Source: Convolutriloba macropyga
Taxonomy: Eukaryota
Direction of reading: 5' to 3'
DNA length: 64,000 nt
Assembly: GCF_964194025.1 (NCBI RefSeq)
Contig: NC_134472.1
Coordinates: 21,204,001-21,268,000, forward strand
Below are positions 26,934 to 34,412 of the stretch, one piece after another. Below the pieces are notes generated by a model that was not told where the DNA came from, did not search any database, and was given only the letters and a program-made list of their open reading frames with translations. The number at the start of each line of letters is the position of its first letter. The first letter of the stretch is position 1. The translations under genes and the position numbers were made by a program.

Positions 26934-27746
26934 ATGGCTGTTAGTCTCATTCTAGACTGCTTACCTGCAGATTTCTCCTCAGTTTTGACGTTATGGAATA
27001 CAGAATCCCCGGAACAACTTCAAGGGTTTATGGGCGAAATTAAAAACAGGTTCCCAAATATCACCAACATTGCTTTTGAACAATTCCAGCAGATCGAGAA
27101 TTCGATGCGAGCAGCGAGTTCGTTTGATGTTGCCATTTTGACGGAGTCAATTGAAATTACGGAAGCGTTGCTCGAATTTTGCTCCAAGATCTTGAAAGCT
27201 AATGGAACTTTGATTTCCGCTGTCAGAAATGAAGCATCGCACGACCATCTGGCAAAATTGGTCAAACTTGCTGGTCTTTCTTGTCCTGAAAACTTTGAAA
27301 AGGTCTATGAGCTGTACGTTTTGAAAGCTCAGAAGAAGTTTTCAACCGGAGCTGCGCAAAAGCTAAATTTTTCGAAGTCAAAATTGTCCATTCAGAGTGC
27401 GAAAAGCTCAACCAACCAGAGTAACGGGAATGTTAAAGTGTGGAAATTGGACATGGACGACGATGATGATTTAATCGACACTGACGCTCTTTTAACCGAA
27501 AAGGATCTTAGCCGACCAACGGCTGAGTCACTCAAGGCTGAATGTGGACCTAATTCGGGTAAAAAGAAGGCTTGCAAAAATTGTACTTGTGGTTTGGCGG
27601 AAGTCTTGGAAGGAAAAGAGGCACCGGCAGTCAAGAGCAGTTGTGGATCGTGTTACCTTGGCGATGCATTCCGATGCAGTTCATGTCCATATTTGGGACT
27701 TCCGCCCTTCAAACCCGGCGAGACAGTCAAGCTGGATATATCCTAA
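26934..27746 (+). CDS. CIAPIN1: Anamorsin / Dre2 homolog (cytosolic Fe-S assembly), intronless CDS
   Basis: Methyltransferase-like N-terminal domain, acidic linker [12 protein letters not shown], and C-terminal [13 protein letters not shown] and [29 protein letters not shown]. First ATG after acceptor ctttcag is at 26934. Confidence 0.96.
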
Positions 27747-30405
27747 ATGTGGAGATGAGATTTTTTGTACCGCCAATCCGCAGAGCAATTGAAAGTGATC
27801 AAAATTGGACTAGAACCTAAACTTTAGGGGTCCCATGTATAGCCAGCCAACAATAATGGGAAACCAAAATATCAAACCGAAATAATAAATTTACCCCTTT
27901 GATATAGGTTTTGGTTTTTTTCGCACAACTCATCTACATTTGAGGGCAAATAATTTCGAGAACAAAGAATAAATCATTGAGTGTAGCCAAAGATTTTTAG
28001 TTTACTTATGAAATGATGATAATGCTAGCAGATGAGTCATAAAAATGGAGTGATTGGTATAAACTAGGAATATTTTATAATTTATCTAACTCTCGTATTT
28101 ATTTTTCTCAAGAACCAGAAGGTAGTTGTAAAACGGGTACACGGACAGTTGGCCTTTAACAGATGATGACGATTGCATGTGGAAGTAGTGGTAGCAGTCC
28201 ATGTCTTTTTATCCACCCTTTCTCTACATAGGGTGCATACAAAATTTTTCCACCAATCTAAATCATATATTAGGCCAAATAGCTAGAAGCATATTCTCTC
28301 AAACCTTCAGGAGTTTTTAGGCCTGTATTAAGTAGATGTGCAGAAATGTTGAGCGGATGTTACAGATTGAACCATTCAGGGAATCACTGGAAAATCGCGC
28401 AAGCAATTAAAGTCGGCTTTTACTGCACGTTTGTCTCATCTTTTTTGCCCTCCCTGACTTTGTAGCCCTCTCGCAGAAACGAAACCTCAATATTGGCACC
28501 TTCAACTGTGAACACAGGACGCTACAAAAGTGAAATGGAAAAGTCAACTTCGTGAAATGTTCTGATAAATATGTTCTCGTCATACACATTTTTAGTTGCA
28601 TTTTCTAAGTTCTTTTGAGATAACTTAGCTCCTCTCTCGCATATTCGAAATATGCTAATCAGCACTGACACTTGTTAATATAATAAAGCCCGACAAAATT
28701 TTCAATTTCTAGTATCAGGGCTTCCAATTTCCTGATAAAGTATTTTGTGTATCGACCTACCTAGTATCTGTCCCATGCTAATAGTGATAAAATTTAACAT
28801 TAAATTAATTAATTAATTATTATTAATTATTTAACATTACTTTAATTCAACTTTATTCTGAAATGAAAAGAAAAAAAAATTTAAAGTTTACCTTTCTCCC
28901 TTTTTCTCCATTCCGATGTGAGGAATGAATGTCAGAATATTGTGTTTGGAAGGCTGTTAATCTTACTTTGGTTTCTCTTTGTTCCACCCTGGTGATAGAG
29001 AATTTTTTCATATTTTTCATGAATCAGACAAAAATGAAAATCAAATGAGATCAAATATATATTTTACCATTTCCTCATTTTGTATCAGAAAGGCTTCCTT
29101 AAATTTGAAAATTTTTGCACAATTAAGATAATTTGTGAGAACGGTGCTTATCCGAAGTACGTTGTACAGTTTGATACACTTGTACGAAACTGATTTCCTC
29201 TCAATTTTTCCTTTTAACAGAGGTTCTTGAAGAAGATCTATGACTTACCGTCTTGTCGGTTTTTCTGGTTCAAAGTGAAATAAATTATTCAATTAAGTTT
29301 CACAATGATGGCCGTTGATTGATCTTAGCACAAATTTAAGTAATTCGTAGATGTGAAGTTCATACCCAGTTAAGAGGTTGTTTCTGCGGAAAATATCATC
29401 CGAACGATTACTTTGTTTTCTGGAAAAAAAAACAAATTTTTTTCTCAGAAATAAGTATGGGCATTAAAGATGAATAACTACAACATCCATATACTAAAAC
29501 TCCGTACTGAATGATCGGATTGACGTTGCGTAGATAATAGTTCAGAAGTTGTTTACGGGAAACATATCTTATTTTTGCGACCAAGCCGCTTTCGGTACTT
29601 AAATTGGATAGTACGAAATCGATGTGTTACTGAAATGACAATTTTGCATCAAGAAAAATGCCAAGATCTTACAAATTGGTTCAACTTGAACACTATTCCG
29701 ACCTAGCTTGGAGCTCAAACTGGAAGCACTCGATCCAATATTTAATTGAACTGTTTTAATGGTTAACAACTAATTTGTTTGCATTTAGCCATTTATTTGC
29801 TATCTCAAGATCCTTCTGTATAGTATGAATCTAACCGGTTATTGGGGGTTAGACTTATAAAACTGTCTAAATTGTGTGTTTTGCTTCTTTACGAGTAAGA
29901 TACATTACGATGTTTCTCAAAATATCTTCCGGTTTAGAAAAAGGATTTGGTCCACCGACTGTTAGGTTTAGCGATAAGTTCAAAGAACTGAGATTTCCTT
30001 GATTAGGCGGAAAAATTGGTAGACTTTCTTAGGTTTTTTTCTGATCTCGTCCGATATGCCTGGACTACAAAAATTTTGGTCCACGCAGCTTTGGAAATGA
30101 ACAAAATCTGAATTAATGCGCCCGAATAACGCACGTGAAAATAACGAAAATAGTGTTGAAGACAATTGATTTCATGATTTGTAAGTAGCCTCAACTTTGT
30201 AATGTTGTTTCGCTCTCAAACTTATTCTTTAGGAGGTCAGATGGTGCCAGCATGAATGCAAATAAAAGATTTCTTCATTTGTGAAGTTTTGCTCTGAAAA
30301 GTGAAGGAAAGTTATGGAAAATTCATGTATGAAATTCGGCGCGCTGTAGATACTCTTGTAAATTTGATTTCGTTTGCTTTCAGAATAACTATTTGAAACA
30401 ATGAG

Positions 30406-30939
30406 ATGAAAGAAAAGCCTCTCAGTTACTCATTTGAAGACATTTATCCTCTGATCGGGAAGCTAGTCAGAATATCACACTTGGACAACATTCCATCGTC
30501 TATCGGAAGACTTTCAATTGTTGATCCTGAATCTCTTGCTATTGTGATTGCTGTTGAACACGGTATCAGAATTGTAATCAGTAGTTCTGTTTTAGCAATT
30601 GAAGAATTTGATGCTACCCTTAGTGACTTTACTTTGCATGACCACTCTTTAAATCTGATTGATGACAACTTTAAACTGATATCTGAAGAGAAAAGCAAAC
30701 TGGATGCAAAATCCGAGGTCGCAAATTTTGACTCTGAAACTTTGTTGAAAAACAAAAAGCGCGTTTTAGAAACTCTGAAAAAGGTGCATCTTGTTTTTAC
30801 AGAAGACTCAAGCAGTGGAGTGTTGACAGTTCTTAATTGTGTCCAGATTCACAAACCTTATACAGCCTCAAGTTGCTACAGCGCCAACGAGTTAATATTG
30901 ACCAGAGTTAAGAAATTGTTGCAATCATTAGAATCATGA
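30406..30939 (+). CDS. GEMIN6: Gem-associated protein 6 (SMN complex; Sm-like fold plus AD domain)
   Basis: GRLSIVDPESLAIVI resembles GWVLTTDPVSANIVL. The C-terminus IHKPYTASSCYSANELILTRVKKLL resembles IDPPYGPENCSSSNEIILSRVQDLI. Confidence 0.88.
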   Translation: MKEKPLSYSFEDIYPLIGKLVRISHLDNIPSSIGRLSIVDPESLAIVIAVEHGIRIVISSSVLAIEEFDATLSDFTLHDHSLNLIDDNFKLISEEKSKLDAKSEVANFDSETLLKNKKRVLETLKKVHLVFTEDSSSGVLTVLNCVQIHKPYTASSCYSANELILTRVKKLLQSLES

Positions 30940-31367
30940 CTTTAAGTGAAATAGTTGACAGATTTACCAAGAAATTTGAGAAACAAATTAAAGTTGACAG
31001 CGAAGCAGACGAGAAAAAAGGTATTAGCAAAGGTTCGATTCCGAAAGAGAAGTTAGTGACTGGATTAGCGTTTGTGGGTTTTGGATCCCTATGGCTTGGA
31101 CTAGGTTTTATGGCTGGATTATCACGGGCAAAGCGGAAGAGTAAAGATCAACTGCAGCCACCTTCAACCTCGATTCATCCGAATACTTTTATGATGAAAG
31201 AAGATGGCGTGAAATTGGCCCGACGGGCTCTTGCTTATGGCTCTCTTGCGGCTATAGTGGGCGTCGCCTCTTCTGTGATTGTCACTTGCTATGCTTTAGA
31301 GATTAGATCTATTCAGGAATTGAGGGATATATCACAAGCAGCAACTCGTAGTCGGAACTGGAAATAG
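30936..31367 (+). CDS. TMEM242: Transmembrane protein 242 (DUF1358)
   Basis: Two Gly-rich hydrophobic helices separated by AKRKS. EDGVKLARRALAYGSLAAIVGV..ALEIRSIQELR resembles [33 protein letters not shown]. Confidence 0.88.
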   Translation: MTLSEIVDRFTKKFEKQIKVDSEADEKKGISKGSIPKEKLVTGLAFVGFGSLWLGLGFMAGLSRAKRKSKDQLQPPSTSIHPNTFMMKEDGVKLARRALAYGSLAAIVGVASSVIVTCYALEIRSIQELRDISQAATRSRNWK

Positions 31368-31623
31368 CAATTAGAAGTTGTTCTTTTAAAAACACTTTCA
31401 ATATATTTTTGTTTCTCCATAATTTGTTTCCGTTGACAGTTCTGATGGTTCTGCTTAGTCACTTTGAGCAAATTAACAGTAGCATCACAACGAAAAGTAA
31501 CAAAAGGGAATTGTGCTATTTCCCATAGAGCTTTTTCTGTGCCGTTGTAGGTTTAAACCTGCCCCCCTTTCAACTGAAGAATAACAAGTGGCTTATGTGA
31601 TTAATCAAGTTTTTTTCGTTTTT

Positions 31624-32015
31624 ATTGCCTTAAATCGAAATTTGTAGCAATAATAGTCATGTTGATCTTTTTTAATGAGATGTTGCGTTCTACCGACTTT
31701 TTGTCTGATAGCTGTTGTCTGACCTGAAAGGCATTAAGTCGCTGAGTGGTTTCAGTTCTCTTTGAGCTTTACAAGTGTATAAGTTACCGAAGCTGTGAGA
31801 AGATAAAAGTTAAACGTGAAGGGCCGTTGTCGGCGTTGAAACCCCCCAGCTCCACCCCCCTCAATTAAGCCACCCCATGATGCACCTCATTTTCCAACTC
31901 TTTCCCACCTCTCTCAGATAATCTTTAAGCTAGACTGCCTAGGCCCCAGCTAGCTACCGACGAAGCTAACCGCGCGACAGTTTGAGAGAAATTTTCCCGA
32001 CGCTAGTCGGTTATG
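31624..32015 (+). mobile_element. HINE-like family V element
   Basis: 5' attgcc..tttgtagcaat; 3' TTTGAGAGAAATT + CCGACGCTAGTCGG + TTATG + T-tract. Confidence 0.6.
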
Positions 32016-34412
32016 TTTTTTTGACTACGCAGTTGATATAGTTTTTGCCAATTCGTCATTTACGTTTAAGTAGGCAAACACCAGCAGAGATACATCTTGA
32101 GTGCATTTTATTTAACCATCAAATTTTAGCAAGTTGGTCAAGGAAGAAAGTTCTTCAAGGCAACAATTTGTCATTCCAACTGTGCGCCCCTCTTGCATTA
32201 TCATCATCATCAAGATAGACCACAAAAATAGTTTTATTTTCGCAACCTTTTAGGTTTATAGCAATTAAAATAGTCCTGAGTTCTTTTTGTGCGAGTTTTT
32301 GCTGGACCGATTTTTCTTCGACGATTTTAACTTTTTGTCCTCGCCCTTAAGCCCCAGCTGGGTACTACCGAATCCCACCCCTCGCCGGTCGTTTGATAGC
32401 AATCCACCCGATGTTAAGGTAGTAACGTTGAGAAAAATAAGCTCAATATTCCCGTTTTGTATAACTTCACAATTGTTTTGATTTGTTCCACGTTCTATCG
32501 ATTGGGTTGTTACATTATGTTCTGTCATGGATTGAGTTTGATTGGTTACTTAATTTTCCCCCATTTTTAAACGAAAAAATGATGCTATTTTATTCTAGCC
32601 CAGTTTTTTATTCTGACACTTTTGTGAGGCATCCCCGACTAACATATCTGGTATCAAATTGAAGCTCTATGCGTGTAGAAATTCACTACAACGAGAATTT
32701 CACGAGTTTAGCTGTTTTAGTTGTTGTGCTATTGTGTTTTACAGATCATGATCAGCTAATTGATTTGACTATTATTGCTCTTCCCTCCCTTAGAGATAGG
32801 AGATTTTGGCGTTGTTTGTGCGCTTTCTATTCAATTAAAGAGGGAAGCTGTAGAGAAGTAATTCAAGGCAGTAGTAAAGCCGGAAGACAAAATTATGGTT
32901 TTGTATGCAACGACCTGGCTGGCATTTTTCATCGGAGAAATGTGTCCATTCGAAATTTTCTATTGCTTTAGTTTCAGAAATGTTAATTGTTTGTAGTTTG
33001 CGCCATTAAGAAATCTGTTTGCGCAAAATTTTCATTATAGAGAATGTGGTCATTTTCTAACTACAATAACCGCTTTTTATTTGCTAGAGTGCGTTTGCTA
33101 TAAGATCCGGGTTTGAAAGTTTTTGAATGAAATTGATAATTTTTTTTAACTTTGCATGCTGATGTTCACACAGTCAAATGAGTTTCCATTTTCTTCTATG
33201 CTTGTTGTTCCAACTTTTTTTTCAAAATGGGAGAATATATAGGCCAGTCTGGTTTTTTCTGCAGTCAATTTTTCACCATTGTGTACGCATCGTAGCGAAA
33301 AGAGATTTTGTAGCCCGTACAAGCTAGATTTGGTTTTTATAAAAAAACTACAAATTTCATTACCGGTGTAAAATGGGGGGCTGTATACTAAAGTAATTGC
33401 TAGAAAAATTGTCATTGAATTAGATAACTACAATTTTATTCGATTATTTAAATTTGTTTGAAAACAAAACAAAGAGAAAATTTCCTTAAAAGTATTTATT
33501 CAAAAGACAGAAAACTGGAAAATTGTTTTTCCAACTTTTCGCTAGTTGTTGCTCTTCTTCCTTCTTAGTGCGCATTTTAAGCTTTAGAATGAAATTTTGT
33601 AATTCAATAGATTTTCAACTTAACGAAAAATTTGAATTGCTAAAAGAATTCCTGAATTTTTTCTGCTGAAAAACACTTGCTAAAAGTTGGTTTCTAACTG
33701 AATTCCTCCAGTCAATTTAGGCTTCTATTTGACGAAGCTTGTTTTAGTCTGATTGGTTTGGTTGAAAACTTACTTTCTACAGCTGACTCAGATCTGGTTG
33801 AATTATCATATTTTAGATTTCGCATGTATAAGCCAGTTGAAATACAAAGGAAATCATTAATCCAGTACGGAAAATGTAAAAAAAAATTACATTTCCTTCC
33901 ACTTGTCACGTAAATTTTGATTTGTATTGTTCTGATTTTGAAAAGGTTCTATTTGAAACGGTTCTCAGGACAAATGAATTGAAGATAACTTCAGACACAG
34001 CTATTACCCATAGGACAAAACTTGACATAAATAATTCTAATTTTTGATGTTTTCTTGATGTCTGGTAACACTTGTTTAAAAAATATTCAATTGAATCTTG
34101 AATCTAACTAAATGGTAAACATTTTATCAGTTGAACAAATTGTCAATGAGAAAAAATGGATGAGAAAAATACCAGTTAATACCAGTTAACTATTTGCTAC
34201 TTCTAGCGTTTAATCTGACGCCTTCACTGGAAATTGACTGTGTTAATTTAAGATAAGTTCTCTTTGCGACTAATTGCTTTTGTTGAGCAGTTAGTGAAGC
34301 TTCTTCAATTTTGTGGGAAATCTATTTATGTTGCAACATATCTGACAGTGCATGTGATTTAATGCCTCTTAAATTTGAATCAAAATGAAGATTGATTTTT
34401 AATTTTCACAAA

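What the first reader, a model, noticed from the sequence alone, without database searches (positions are those of the whole stretch)
30401..31367. uORF, GEMIN6 and TMEM242 chained by two ATGA stop-start overlaps
Seen: the GEMIN6 stop TGA (30937-30939) overlaps the TMEM242 start ATG (30936-30938) as ATGA. A two-codon uORF ATG-AGA-TGA (30401-30409) overlaps the GEMIN6 start in the same way. Both CDSs are intronless, no intergenic space or AATAAA separates them, and GEMIN6 has no internal Met, although about four out-of-frame ATGs exist. Known: ATGA overlaps mediate translational coupling in prokaryotes and termination-reinitiation in some viruses, and are rare for nuclear genes. Inference: a bicistronic mRNA encoding an snRNP assembly factor and a mitochondrial membrane protein.
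Basis: partly seen in the sequence, partly recalled or inferred. Interest (0 to 1): 0.78.

Follow-up and report, generated by a model that had tools for sequence, protein, structure and literature searches.

The report
Spliced-leader bicistronic Gemin6-TMEM242 mRNA in acoels
In this acoel worm, a spliced-leader-capped messenger RNA appears to carry a tiny upstream reading frame, the snRNP assembly factor Gemin6 and the mitochondrial membrane protein TMEM242, a layout kept across distant acoels that implies two proteins are made from one animal mRNA.

Summary
ORF1 (30406-30939, Gemin6_C) and ORF2 (30936-31367, DUF1358/TMEM242) overlap as ATGA. A two-codon uORF (30401-30409) overlaps the Gemin6 start the same way.

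New here: the genome is an acoel's. Contigs of run X4, RNA by its coverage pattern, show the published Symsagittifera spliced leader joined at the AG at 30382-30383. They then tile without a gap across both ORFs to about 31419. No leader junction is seen before ORF2. Both genes are single copy.

Six further acoel lineages (36-50% Gemin6 identity) keep Gemin6 immediately followed by TMEM242. One is a cDNA-like contig that starts with the same leader.

The ORF1/ORF2 ATGA is not conserved: the spacing runs from -17 to +12 nt. Three things are conserved:
- the tight juxtaposition of the two ORFs;
- a uORF whose UGA overlaps the Gemin6 AUG, in 8 of 8 loci with a known 5'UTR;
- a shortage of ATG inside Gemin6 (17 seen, about 67 expected).

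No TURBS motif 1 (UGGGA), stable structure or pyrimidine-rich internal acceptor was found.

Best reading: a true bicistronic mRNA whose second cistron is reached by scanning or reinitiating ribosomes, not by strict stop-start coupling. Translation itself is untested. Other windows of this genome already gave spliced-leader-headed LINEs and a PIG-P/LIPT1 overlap.

The parts
30367..30383 (+). Pyrimidine-rich tract (atttcgtttgctttc) plus AG (30382-30383): the spliced-leader trans-splice acceptor
   Evidence: an X4 contig lies on 30382-30546 with 22 loose letters before it. Those letters equal the published acoel SL. The final AG fits both the SL and the genome, so the exon starts at 30384. The pyrimidine fraction is 0.80.
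30384..31419 (+). Body of the mature mRNA (about 1036 nt plus SL), holding the uORF, Gemin6 and TMEM242
   Evidence: X4 contigs 30382-30546, 30517-30750 and 30721-31419 (depth 186, 254, 301) overlap by 30 nt. X4 depth is zero across 28973-30351 and from 31534 to about 31927; beyond that only traces (0.55-0.7) over the repeat at 31928-32518.
30401..30409 (+). Two-codon uORF (ATG AGA TGA) whose stop overlaps the Gemin6 ATG
   Evidence: An equivalent uORF of 2-11 codons ends on the same overlapping TGA in 8 of 8 loci with a known 5'UTR. Chance per locus is 0.04-0.17.
30406..30939 (+). Gemin6-like ORF, 177 aa, intronless, without internal Met and poor in ATG
   Evidence: Pfam Gemin6_C 1.8e-10. It is the only Gemin6_C locus in the genome. 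It has 4 interior ATGs against 10.3 expected, the lowest ratio of 13 ORFs in the window.
30611..30748 (+). The four +1-frame ATGs inside Gemin6 (30611, 30638, 30662, 30704), opening ORFs of 13, 4, 5 and 14 codons that all end at least 188 nt before the ORF2 ATG
30936..30939 (+). ATGA: ORF2 start overlapping ORF1 stop
   Evidence: It is kept in the L001/L016 lineage but not in L015, L017, L018, L027 or L028.
30936..31367 (+). TMEM242/AIM11-family ORF (DUF1358), 143 aa, two hydrophobic helices, intronless
   Evidence: Pfam DUF1358 2.7e-9. The nearest Atlas clusters are AIM11/DUF1358 and 'Transmembrane protein 242'. It is single copy in the genome. Its ATG count is not depleted: 7 against 8.1 expected.
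30987..30992 (+). ATTAAA, the only canonical-type poly(A) hexamer within the transcript, 48 nt after the Gemin6 stop; no sign that it is used
   Evidence: An X4 contig runs across it unbroken.
31400..31419 (+). Apparent 3' end of the RNA (31419), with AATATA (31400-31405) as the only candidate signal
   Evidence: the contig ends at 31419 and depth is 0 from 31534; sequence. That AATATA acts as the signal is inferred.

Best explanation
The locus is one transcription unit of an acoel worm, Symsagittifera roscoffensis or a close relative. The pre-mRNA receives the species' spliced leader at the AG at 30382-30383. It ends near 31419. The result is a roughly 1.07-kb mature mRNA that carries, in order, a 2-codon uORF, Gemin6 and TMEM242. 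It is not resolved into two mRNAs. This much is shown at the level of RNA contigs. The rest is inferred. Both proteins are translated from this mRNA. TMEM242 is reached by ribosomes that scan through the Gemin6 ORF rather than by ribosomes that have just finished Gemin6. Ribosomes that start at the uORF AUG terminate on the UGA that overlaps the Gemin6 AUG. They are therefore past that AUG. They resume scanning along an AUG-poor stretch, where the few ATGs open ORFs of 1-26 codons. They then reinitiate at the TMEM242 AUG. Ribosomes that leak past the uORF AUG start 5 nt later and make Gemin6. On this reading the uORF splits ribosome flow between the two cistrons. The ATGA at the Gemin6/TMEM242 junction is one of several tolerated tight spacings.
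For: RNA: X4 covers only exon-like blocks. It carries the SL at 30382/30384 and tiles across the junction at similar depth. Only three X4 records are partly laid, with loose ends at 30382, 32020 and 32381, none near 30932. The SL is identical to the published one, and SL RNA genes with a GT donor stand in arrays in this genome. L028 is a cDNA-like contig with a template-switch remnant and the full SL, followed by the 5'UTR, Gemin6, a 10-nt spacer and ORF2. Both genes are single copy, so TMEM242 must be expressed from here. Conservation: the Gemin6-TMEM242 order is found in seven lineages with 36-50% Gemin6 identity between lineages. Scanning signature: interior ATGs in Gemin6 number 4, 0, 2-3, 2, 3, 4 and 2 against 8-13 expected per lineage (P 0.02 or lower each, dinucleotide shuffles). 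ORF2 is not clearly depleted (one lineage, L018, is marginal at P 0.046). There is no internal Met in 8 of 9 sequences. A uORF stop overlaps the Gemin6 AUG in 8 of 8 loci, without any peptide conservation. The junction region is not structured (z 0 to +2).
Against: No translation data exist. In the window's own lineage the ATG shortage comes from the lack of Met codons, not from codon choice: the amino-acid-preserving permutation gives P=0.96. L028 has one in-frame internal Met. The Gemin6 AUG has a purine at -3 in four of seven lineages, so leakiness is not obvious. The very tight ORF1/ORF2 spacing in all lineages is not required by a scanning model and fits stop-start coupling better. Logan contigs drop minor variants and cannot show single molecules. 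uORFs are also common simple repressors.
Confidence: 0.5

Rival explanations
1. Termination-reinitiation. Ribosomes translate all of Gemin6, terminate at 30937-30939, and a fraction restarts at the overlapping or nearby TMEM242 AUG. TMEM242 output is then coupled to Gemin6 translation.
For: The stop and start lie within -17 to +12 nt in all seven lineages, and exactly ATGA in two of them. The spacers are too short for any processing signal. The same AUGA geometry occurs at the uORF/Gemin6 junction, and once more between two uORFs in L017.
Against: Restart after a 177-codon ORF normally needs a tethering element. No UGGGA (TURBS motif 1) lies within 120 nt upstream in any lineage, and no stable structure was found. 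The strong ATG shortage in Gemin6 has no role in this model. The exact overlap and the relative frame are not conserved.
Confidence: 0.2
2. Alternative SL trans-splicing, an operon-like resolution. Some pre-mRNAs receive the SL at an AG just upstream of the TMEM242 AUG (for example the AG at 30930-30931, with the exon starting at 30932). This gives a monocistronic TMEM242 mRNA. The bicistronic RNA yields only Gemin6.
For: The organism trans-splices about 30% of its genes (PMC9911081). In other SL-using animals polycistrons are resolved this way (general knowledge). Every lineage has an AG 2-28 nt before the ORF2 AUG. Depth rises mildly 5' to 3' (186, 254, 301). Contig simplification would clip a minor SL junction.
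Against: No X4 contig carries a loose end near 30932. The candidate AGs lack a pyrimidine tract (0.27-0.67, against 0.80-0.87 at the real acceptors) and lack the tttcAG consensus. Use of such a site would leave a stop-less Gemin6 fragment. The ATG shortage in Gemin6 would be unexplained. An AG within 30 nt is expected by chance.
Confidence: 0.17
3. An internal promoter or an IRES-like element inside the Gemin6 ORF drives independent TMEM242 expression.
For: Nothing specific. It cannot be excluded from contigs alone.
Against: There is no break or step in the RNA contigs within Gemin6 beyond the heterozygosity breaks shared with the DNA runs. No structure exceeds shuffles at the junction. The region is a conserved coding sequence.
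Confidence: 0.05

Closest known systems
uORF-directed choice of downstream start sites by reinitiation (C/EBP alpha/beta isoforms; GCN4/ATF4 delayed reinitiation). From general knowledge, not checked in papers here.
   Same: A short uORF, independent of its own sequence, ends at or next to the first main AUG. Ribosomes that translated it skip that AUG and reinitiate further downstream. The position of the uORF stop is the conserved feature.
   Different: Here the downstream start would open a second, unrelated protein in another frame about 530 nt away, not an N-terminally shortened isoform or a stress-regulated ORF. Nothing has been shown experimentally.
Eukaryotic bicistronic or polycistronic mRNAs read by leaky scanning (Drosophila dicistronic genes, green-algal and fungal polycistronic transcripts, plant-virus subgenomic RNAs). 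From general knowledge.
   Same: Two unrelated conserved proteins lie on one capped, polyadenylated mRNA. The upstream cistron is depleted of AUG. The intercistronic distance is small.
   Different: This one sits in an SL trans-splicing animal, where polycistrons would be expected to be resolved. The 5' end is an SL. An obligatory overlapping uORF precedes cistron 1.
Viral termination-reinitiation (calicivirus VP1/VP2, influenza B M1/BM2 UAAUG, some fungal viruses with AUGA). From general knowledge.
   Same: There is an AUGA or near-overlap of stop and start, and the second ORF is in another frame.
   Different: The UGGGA motif was not found, nor any structure. Other 18S complementarity was not tested. 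The spacing varies from -17 to +12 among relatives. The AUG-poor first cistron is not a feature of these systems.
SL-resolved operons of nematodes, flatworms and tunicates (Ciona operons lack intercistronic regions). From general knowledge. SL trans-splicing in S. roscoffensis is documented in PMC9911081.
   Same: Genes lie on the same strand, tightly packed and often intronless, in an SL trans-splicing genome. The first gene's 5' end is SL trans-spliced.
   Different: No SL junction was seen on the second cistron. The cistrons overlap, so the first mRNA could not keep its stop codon. No operons have been reported for acoels in the searched literature.

Membership tests
Gemin6 (SMN-complex component) | C-terminal Gemin6_C domain (PF20417) above Pfam's gathering score | tested here: met
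   40.8 bits against a cut-off of 33.4, residues 106-175; it is the only such locus in the genome; the top Atlas cluster is 'gem-associated protein 6-like' (0.93).
Gemin6 (SMN-complex component) | N-terminal Sm-like domain (PF06372) | tested here: inconclusive
   no PF06372 hit at E up to 1; the AlphaFold model is poor (pLDDT 50.6; residues 1-107 below 50), so no fold comparison was made; no PDB hit by sequence.
Gemin6 (SMN-complex component) | Distinct from the related LSM12/AD-domain family | tested here: met
   AD scores only 16.7 bits, below its cut-off of 23.4; a separate AD-domain locus above the cut-off lies on another chromosome (C4).
TMEM242 / AIM11 (DUF1358, PF07096) | DUF1358 domain above the gathering score, with two hydrophobic helices | tested here: met
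   37.4 bits against a cut-off of 23.4; the nearest Atlas clusters are AIM11/DUF1358 and TMEM242. The two hydrophobic stretches (about residues 41-62 and 101-121) are read directly from the translation.
TMEM242 / AIM11 (DUF1358, PF07096) | Mitochondrial inner-membrane location and a role in ATP synthase assembly | not testable with these tools
   Known for the human protein from general knowledge only.
SL trans-spliced mRNA of acoels | Non-genomic spliced leader joined to the transcript at an AG acceptor | tested here: met
   a 22-nt loose end at 30382; it is identical to the published S. roscoffensis SL; the leader is absent from the window. SL RNA genes with a GT donor stand in arrays on C9.
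SL-resolved operon | Downstream cistron carries its own SL at an acceptor between the cistrons | tested here: inconclusive
   no SL junction contig near 30932, but contigs drop minor forms; the candidate AGs lack pyrimidine tracts.
SL-resolved operon | Upstream mRNA can be cleaved and polyadenylated ahead of the downstream acceptor with an intact ORF | tested here: not met
   the ORFs overlap by 4 nt, so any cut before the ORF2 AUG removes the Gemin6 stop; no AWTAAA upstream of the junction.
Termination-reinitiation (TURBS type) | Stop and restart codons overlapping or within a few nucleotides | tested here: met
   -4 nt here and -17 to +12 nt in relatives.
Termination-reinitiation (TURBS type) | Upstream tethering element (UGGGA motif 1 or a structured region) within about 100 nt | tested here: not met
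   no TGGGA within 120 nt in any of 9 loci; folding z-scores of 0.03 to 2.1. Complementarity to the acoel 18S rRNA beyond motif 1 was not tested.
Scanning-dependent bicistronic mRNA (leaky scanning or reinitiation) | Upstream cistron depleted of AUG in all frames | tested here: met
   17 observed against about 67 expected over seven lineages, while ORF2 is not clearly depleted (L018 marginal); the lowest ratio of 13 ORFs in the window. Caveat: codon-level avoidance is significant only in L001 and L018.
Scanning-dependent bicistronic mRNA (leaky scanning or reinitiation) | Weak context at the upstream AUG or a bypass device | tested here: inconclusive
   position -3 of the Gemin6 AUG is G, G, A, C, C, C and G, and +4 is always A. 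A uORF ending on the AUG is present in 8 of 8 loci, but its effect is untested.

The most novel reading that the evidence does not exclude
A conserved ribosome splitter. In acoels a position-conserved uORF, whose stop codon overlaps the Gemin6 AUG, diverts a set fraction of ribosomes past Gemin6. These ribosomes travel through an AUG-cleared coding region to the TMEM242 AUG. One SL-capped mRNA would thus give fixed proportions of a nuclear RNA-processing factor and a mitochondrial assembly factor. This would be a stably maintained, unresolved bicistron in an SL trans-splicing animal. Together with the PIG-P/LIPT1 overlap in the same genome, it might be a sign that acoels use true polycistronic translation rather than SL resolution.
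Probability: 0.35. Interest if true: 0.7.

Novelty: new member of a known kind. Interest (0 to 1): 0.55.

Why it matters
Animals that trans-splice a leader onto mRNAs are thought to use it to cut polycistronic precursors into single-gene mRNAs. Here an SL-bearing mRNA appears to stay bicistronic. It has done so across acoel lineages that share only 36-50% Gemin6 protein identity. It also carries sequence signatures, a uORF stop on the first AUG and an AUG-cleared first cistron, that make a specific translational mechanism testable. It gives annotators of acoel genomes a concrete case where one transcript must be given two CDSs. It also offers a compact natural cassette of about 1 kb for studying reinitiation in a bilaterian outgroup. 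If the mechanism turns out to be plain leaky scanning, it is one more example of a known phenomenon.

Tried and rejected
- Rfam scan of the whole window: no family at gathering score.
- PDB sequence search with ORF1: only a chance haemoglobin hit.
- AlphaFold2 of ORF1 with a 5-sequence alignment: pLDDT 50.6. This is too poor for a fold search, so none was run.
- Profile search for non-acoel Gemin6, meant to compare Met content: it returned only acoel relatives. Whether a Met-free Gemin6 is unusual for the family therefore could not be tested. My recollection that human GEMIN6 has several Met is from memory only.
- Scan of metagenome contigs for the ORF2 start of the L028 species: 0 hits. The collection evidently lacks that record, so other transcript forms could not be found.
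- Look-up of P0014: not on record.
- Literature. Gemin6 plus TMEM242 gave one irrelevant paper. Acoel plus operon plus trans-splicing gave nothing on acoel operons. Gemin7 plus bicistronic gave nothing that confirms my memory of a bicistronic Drosophila Gemin gene, so that claim is dropped.
- A frameshift or readthrough fusion of the two ORFs is rejected: ORF2 lies in a different relative frame in different lineages (+2, +1 and 0).
- RNA-level conservation of the TGCTACAGCGC..AACGAG block upstream of the junction is rejected: it encodes the conserved C(Y/F)SANE motif and varies at synonymous sites among lineages.
- The PIG-P/LIPT1 overlap (L029) as a second instance of the same design: its upstream ORF is not Met-free and the overlap is 71 nt, so it does not share the signature.
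- The exact splice sites of the 1.1-kb interruption in ORF2 of L017 could not be resolved.
Full report
**1. The observation**

- ORF1 runs 30406-30939 (177 aa) and ORF2 runs 30936-31367 (143 aa). They share ATGA at 30936-30939.
- ATG-AGA-TGA at 30401-30409 overlaps the ORF1 ATG in the same way.
- ORF1 has no internal Met. It has four +1-frame ATGs, at 30611, 30638, 30662 and 30704.
- There is no AATAAA between the ORFs. The only AWTAAA in the transcript is ATTAAA at 30987-30992.

The family names hold.
- Pfam places ORF1 in Gemin6_C (40.8 bits, cut-off 33.4) and ORF2 in DUF1358, the TMEM242/AIM11 family (37.4 bits, cut-off 23.4).
- The protein Atlas agrees.
- ORF1 is the only Gemin6_C locus in the genome, and a separate AD-domain (possibly LSM12) locus lies on another chromosome.
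- Both ORFs are single copy in the 1.18-Gb assembly.

**2. Organism and transcript**

Four public runs hold the stretch. Three cover it evenly and are DNA.

The fourth, X4, covers only 27200-28794 and 30382-31419, with zero depth between those blocks and only traces over a repeat beyond them. That is the pattern of RNA.
- Its contigs lie on 30382-30546, 30517-30750 and 30721-31419, at depths 186, 254 and 301.
- They overlap by 30 nt, at breaks that the DNA runs share.
- The last contig has more than 200 nt on each side of the ATGA.

The first contig begins with 22 letters that are not in the window. Those letters occur about 2,600 times in the genome. A full-text search finds them in one work only, as the spliced leader of the acoel Symsagittifera roscoffensis, GCCTAATTGTTGTGATAAACTTATTAAATAGA. 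That paper reports 30.2% of genes as SL trans-spliced, GC 36.7% and an assembly of 1.1 Gb (PMC9911081).

The genome holds arrays of SL RNA genes in which the leader is followed by GT. The window therefore comes from S. roscoffensis or a very close relative.

The mRNA starts by trans-splicing at the AG at 30382-30383, behind a pyrimidine-rich tract. It ends near 31419.

Only three X4 records are partly laid. Their loose ends are at 30382, 32020 and 32381, so none marks a leader junction before ORF2. The limit of this evidence is that these are Logan contigs. They drop minor variants and cannot prove single molecules.

**3. Relatives**

Protein searches and contig look-ups give the same gene pair in six further lineages, whose Gemin6 is 36-50% identical between lineages.
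- L002 and L031 are two alleles or haplotypes within one assembly. Their Gemin6 proteins are 93% identical.
- L028 is the most telling. It begins with a template-switch remnant and the full leader, and it continues through a 39-nt 5'UTR, Gemin6, a 10-nt spacer and ORF2. This is cDNA evidence for a leader-headed RNA spanning both ORFs in another acoel.
- The upstream neighbour CIAPIN1 is also syntenic.

**4. What is and is not conserved**

| Feature | Result across lineages |
|---|---|
| ORF1 stop to ORF2 start distance | -4 (window/L002), -4 (L001/L016), -17 (L015), +2 (L018), +4 (L017), +12 (L027/L032), +10 (L028) |
| Relative frame of ORF2 | +2, +1 or 0 |
| uORF whose TGA overlaps the Gemin6 ATG | Present in all 8 loci with a known 5'UTR; 2, 7, 10 or 11 codons; no peptide similarity |
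| Interior ATGs in the Gemin6 ORF | 4, 0, 2-3, 2, 3, 4 and 2, against 8-13 expected from dinucleotide shuffles |

- The ATGA at the second junction is one of several tight spacings. A frameshift or readthrough fusion is excluded by the varying frames.
- Shuffled 5'UTRs give such a uORF in 4-17% of trials per locus.
- The ATG shortage is significant in each lineage (P 0.02 or lower). The total is 17 observed against about 67 expected. ORF2 of the same loci is not clearly depleted (L018 is marginal, P 0.046).
- The window's Gemin6 has the lowest observed/expected ratio of the 13 ORFs of 120 aa or more in the window.
- Eight of nine Gemin6 sequences have no internal Met.
- The ATGs that remain open ORFs of 1-26 codons. 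Apart from L028's in-frame Met, all of them end before the ORF2 start.
- Caveat: with the amino-acid sequence held fixed, codon choice avoids ATG significantly only in L001 and L018. In the window lineage it does not (P=0.96), so there the shortage is at the protein level.

**5. Tests of the rivals**

*Termination-reinitiation.* The proximity of stop and start is met. No UGGGA lies within 120 nt upstream in any locus. The junction regions fold no better than shuffles (z 0.03 to 2.1).

*SL resolution.* Each lineage has an AG 2-28 nt before the ORF2 ATG, which is about what chance gives.
- These AGs have pyrimidine fractions of 0.27-0.67. The 5' acceptors score 0.80-0.87 and all read tttcAG or ttcAG.
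- Using such a site would remove the Gemin6 stop codon.
- No SL junction contig was seen there.

*Internal promoter or IRES.* Nothing supports it.

**6. Mechanism proposed**

Shown:
- an SL trans-spliced RNA species covering both ORFs;
- single-copy genes;
- long-term conservation of the arrangement.

Inferred: both proteins are translated from this RNA, and the second is reached by scanning ribosomes.

The most economical model uses all three conserved features.
- Ribosomes that initiate on the uORF terminate on the UGA overlapping the Gemin6 AUG. They are then past that AUG.
- They resume scanning while they reacquire the initiator complex.
- They meet few or no AUGs for about 530 nt.
- They reinitiate at the TMEM242 AUG.
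- Ribosomes that leak past the uORF AUG make Gemin6.

This works like uORF-directed start selection in C/EBP or delayed reinitiation in GCN4/ATF4 (general knowledge), applied here to two different proteins. The tight ORF1/ORF2 spacing is not explained by this model. It keeps stop-start coupling alive as a contributor.

My odds:

| Reading | Probability |
|---|---|
| Bicistronic mature mRNA is the main form | about 0.85 |
| ORF2 is translated from it | about 0.7 |
| Scanning or reinitiation is the main route | about 0.5 |
| Termination-reinitiation is the main route | about 0.2 |
| Alternative internal SL trans-splicing supplies TMEM242 | about 0.17 |

**7. Comparison and novelty**

SL trans-splicing in this species is published (PMC9911081). 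Bicistronic eukaryotic mRNAs and uORF-controlled reinitiation are known kinds. No paper in the searched library links Gemin6 and TMEM242 or describes acoel operons or bicistrons. I file this as a new member of a known kind. The interesting twist is that it stays unresolved in an SL trans-splicing animal and carries a position-conserved uORF.

Earlier notes of this scan on other windows of the same genome describe SL-headed LINE copies. That matches what I saw. They also describe a PIG-P/LIPT1 overlap. I looked at it briefly, and it does not share the AUG-poor signature.

Noticed in passing
G000 genome-wide; examples L003-L014: The 22-nt core of the spliced leader occurs about 2,600 times in the genome. 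In 12 of 12 sampled copies it is not followed by a GT donor but runs straight into varied sequence, and one downstream sequence family recurs (L007, L011, L013). This looks like retrocopies of trans-spliced RNAs and matches earlier notes on SL-headed LINEs.
   Followed up: partly
G000:C9:23.14-23.78 Mb and 62.06-62.12 Mb: There are large arrays of SL RNA genes (leader followed by GT) spaced about 1.0-1.9 kb apart on both strands. Isolated SL-GT copies lie on other chromosomes.
   Followed up: no
L028:1-46: The cDNA-like contig shows CTTTTA between the template-switch remnant (ACATGGGGG) and the published start of the leader. The full leader may therefore be about 37 nt, longer than the 32 nt reported in PMC9911081.
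   Followed up: no
window 26934-27746 (+), RNA contigs to 28794: The upstream neighbour is CIAPIN1/anamorsin, apparently as one uninterrupted 270-codon ORF with a 3'UTR of about 1 kb (depth falls from 889 to 63). The order CIAPIN1, Gemin6, TMEM242 is conserved in L001 and L017. Because the Gemin6 5' end is trans-spliced, its promoter is unknown and could lie in or before CIAPIN1. No RNA covers the 1.6 kb between them.
   Followed up: partly
L017:1892-3000: In one relative, ORF2 is interrupted about 64 nt after its ATG by roughly 1.1 kb that is absent from the near relative L027/L032. I could not place canonical GT-AG sites in frame, so it may be an intron with other boundaries or an insertion that breaks the gene in that copy.
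   Followed up: partly
L017:1248-1309: Two uORFs and Gemin6 are chained by two ATGA overlaps. The uORF1 stop at 1275-1277 lies on the uORF2 ATG at 1274-1276, and the uORF2 stop lies on the Gemin6 ATG at 1306. In L018 and L017 the first ATG follows the putative acceptor AG directly.
   Followed up: no
window 31995-32403: A repeat downstream of the gene has 4-5 times the depth in the DNA runs and many alternative joints and loose ends at 32018-32020 and 32381-32403. It is probably a transposable element that is polymorphic among haplotypes.
   Followed up: no
L002 versus L031 (both from assembly ERZ25071359): One assembly holds two versions of the locus. One has an ORF2 product identical to the window's, and the other has a Gemin6 only 93% identical to the window's. 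This means very high heterozygosity or a recent duplicate collapsed in G000. The intergenic DNA in runs X1 and X2 also differs from the window at many sites.
   Followed up: no
L029 and L030 (G000:C9:39.860-39.869 Mb): The PIG-P and lipoyltransferase-like ORFs overlap by 71 nt on the same strand, and the locus is present twice, 5 kb apart. The PIG-P ORF is not Met-free, so it does not show the AUG-poor signature of the Gemin6 cistron.
   Followed up: partly
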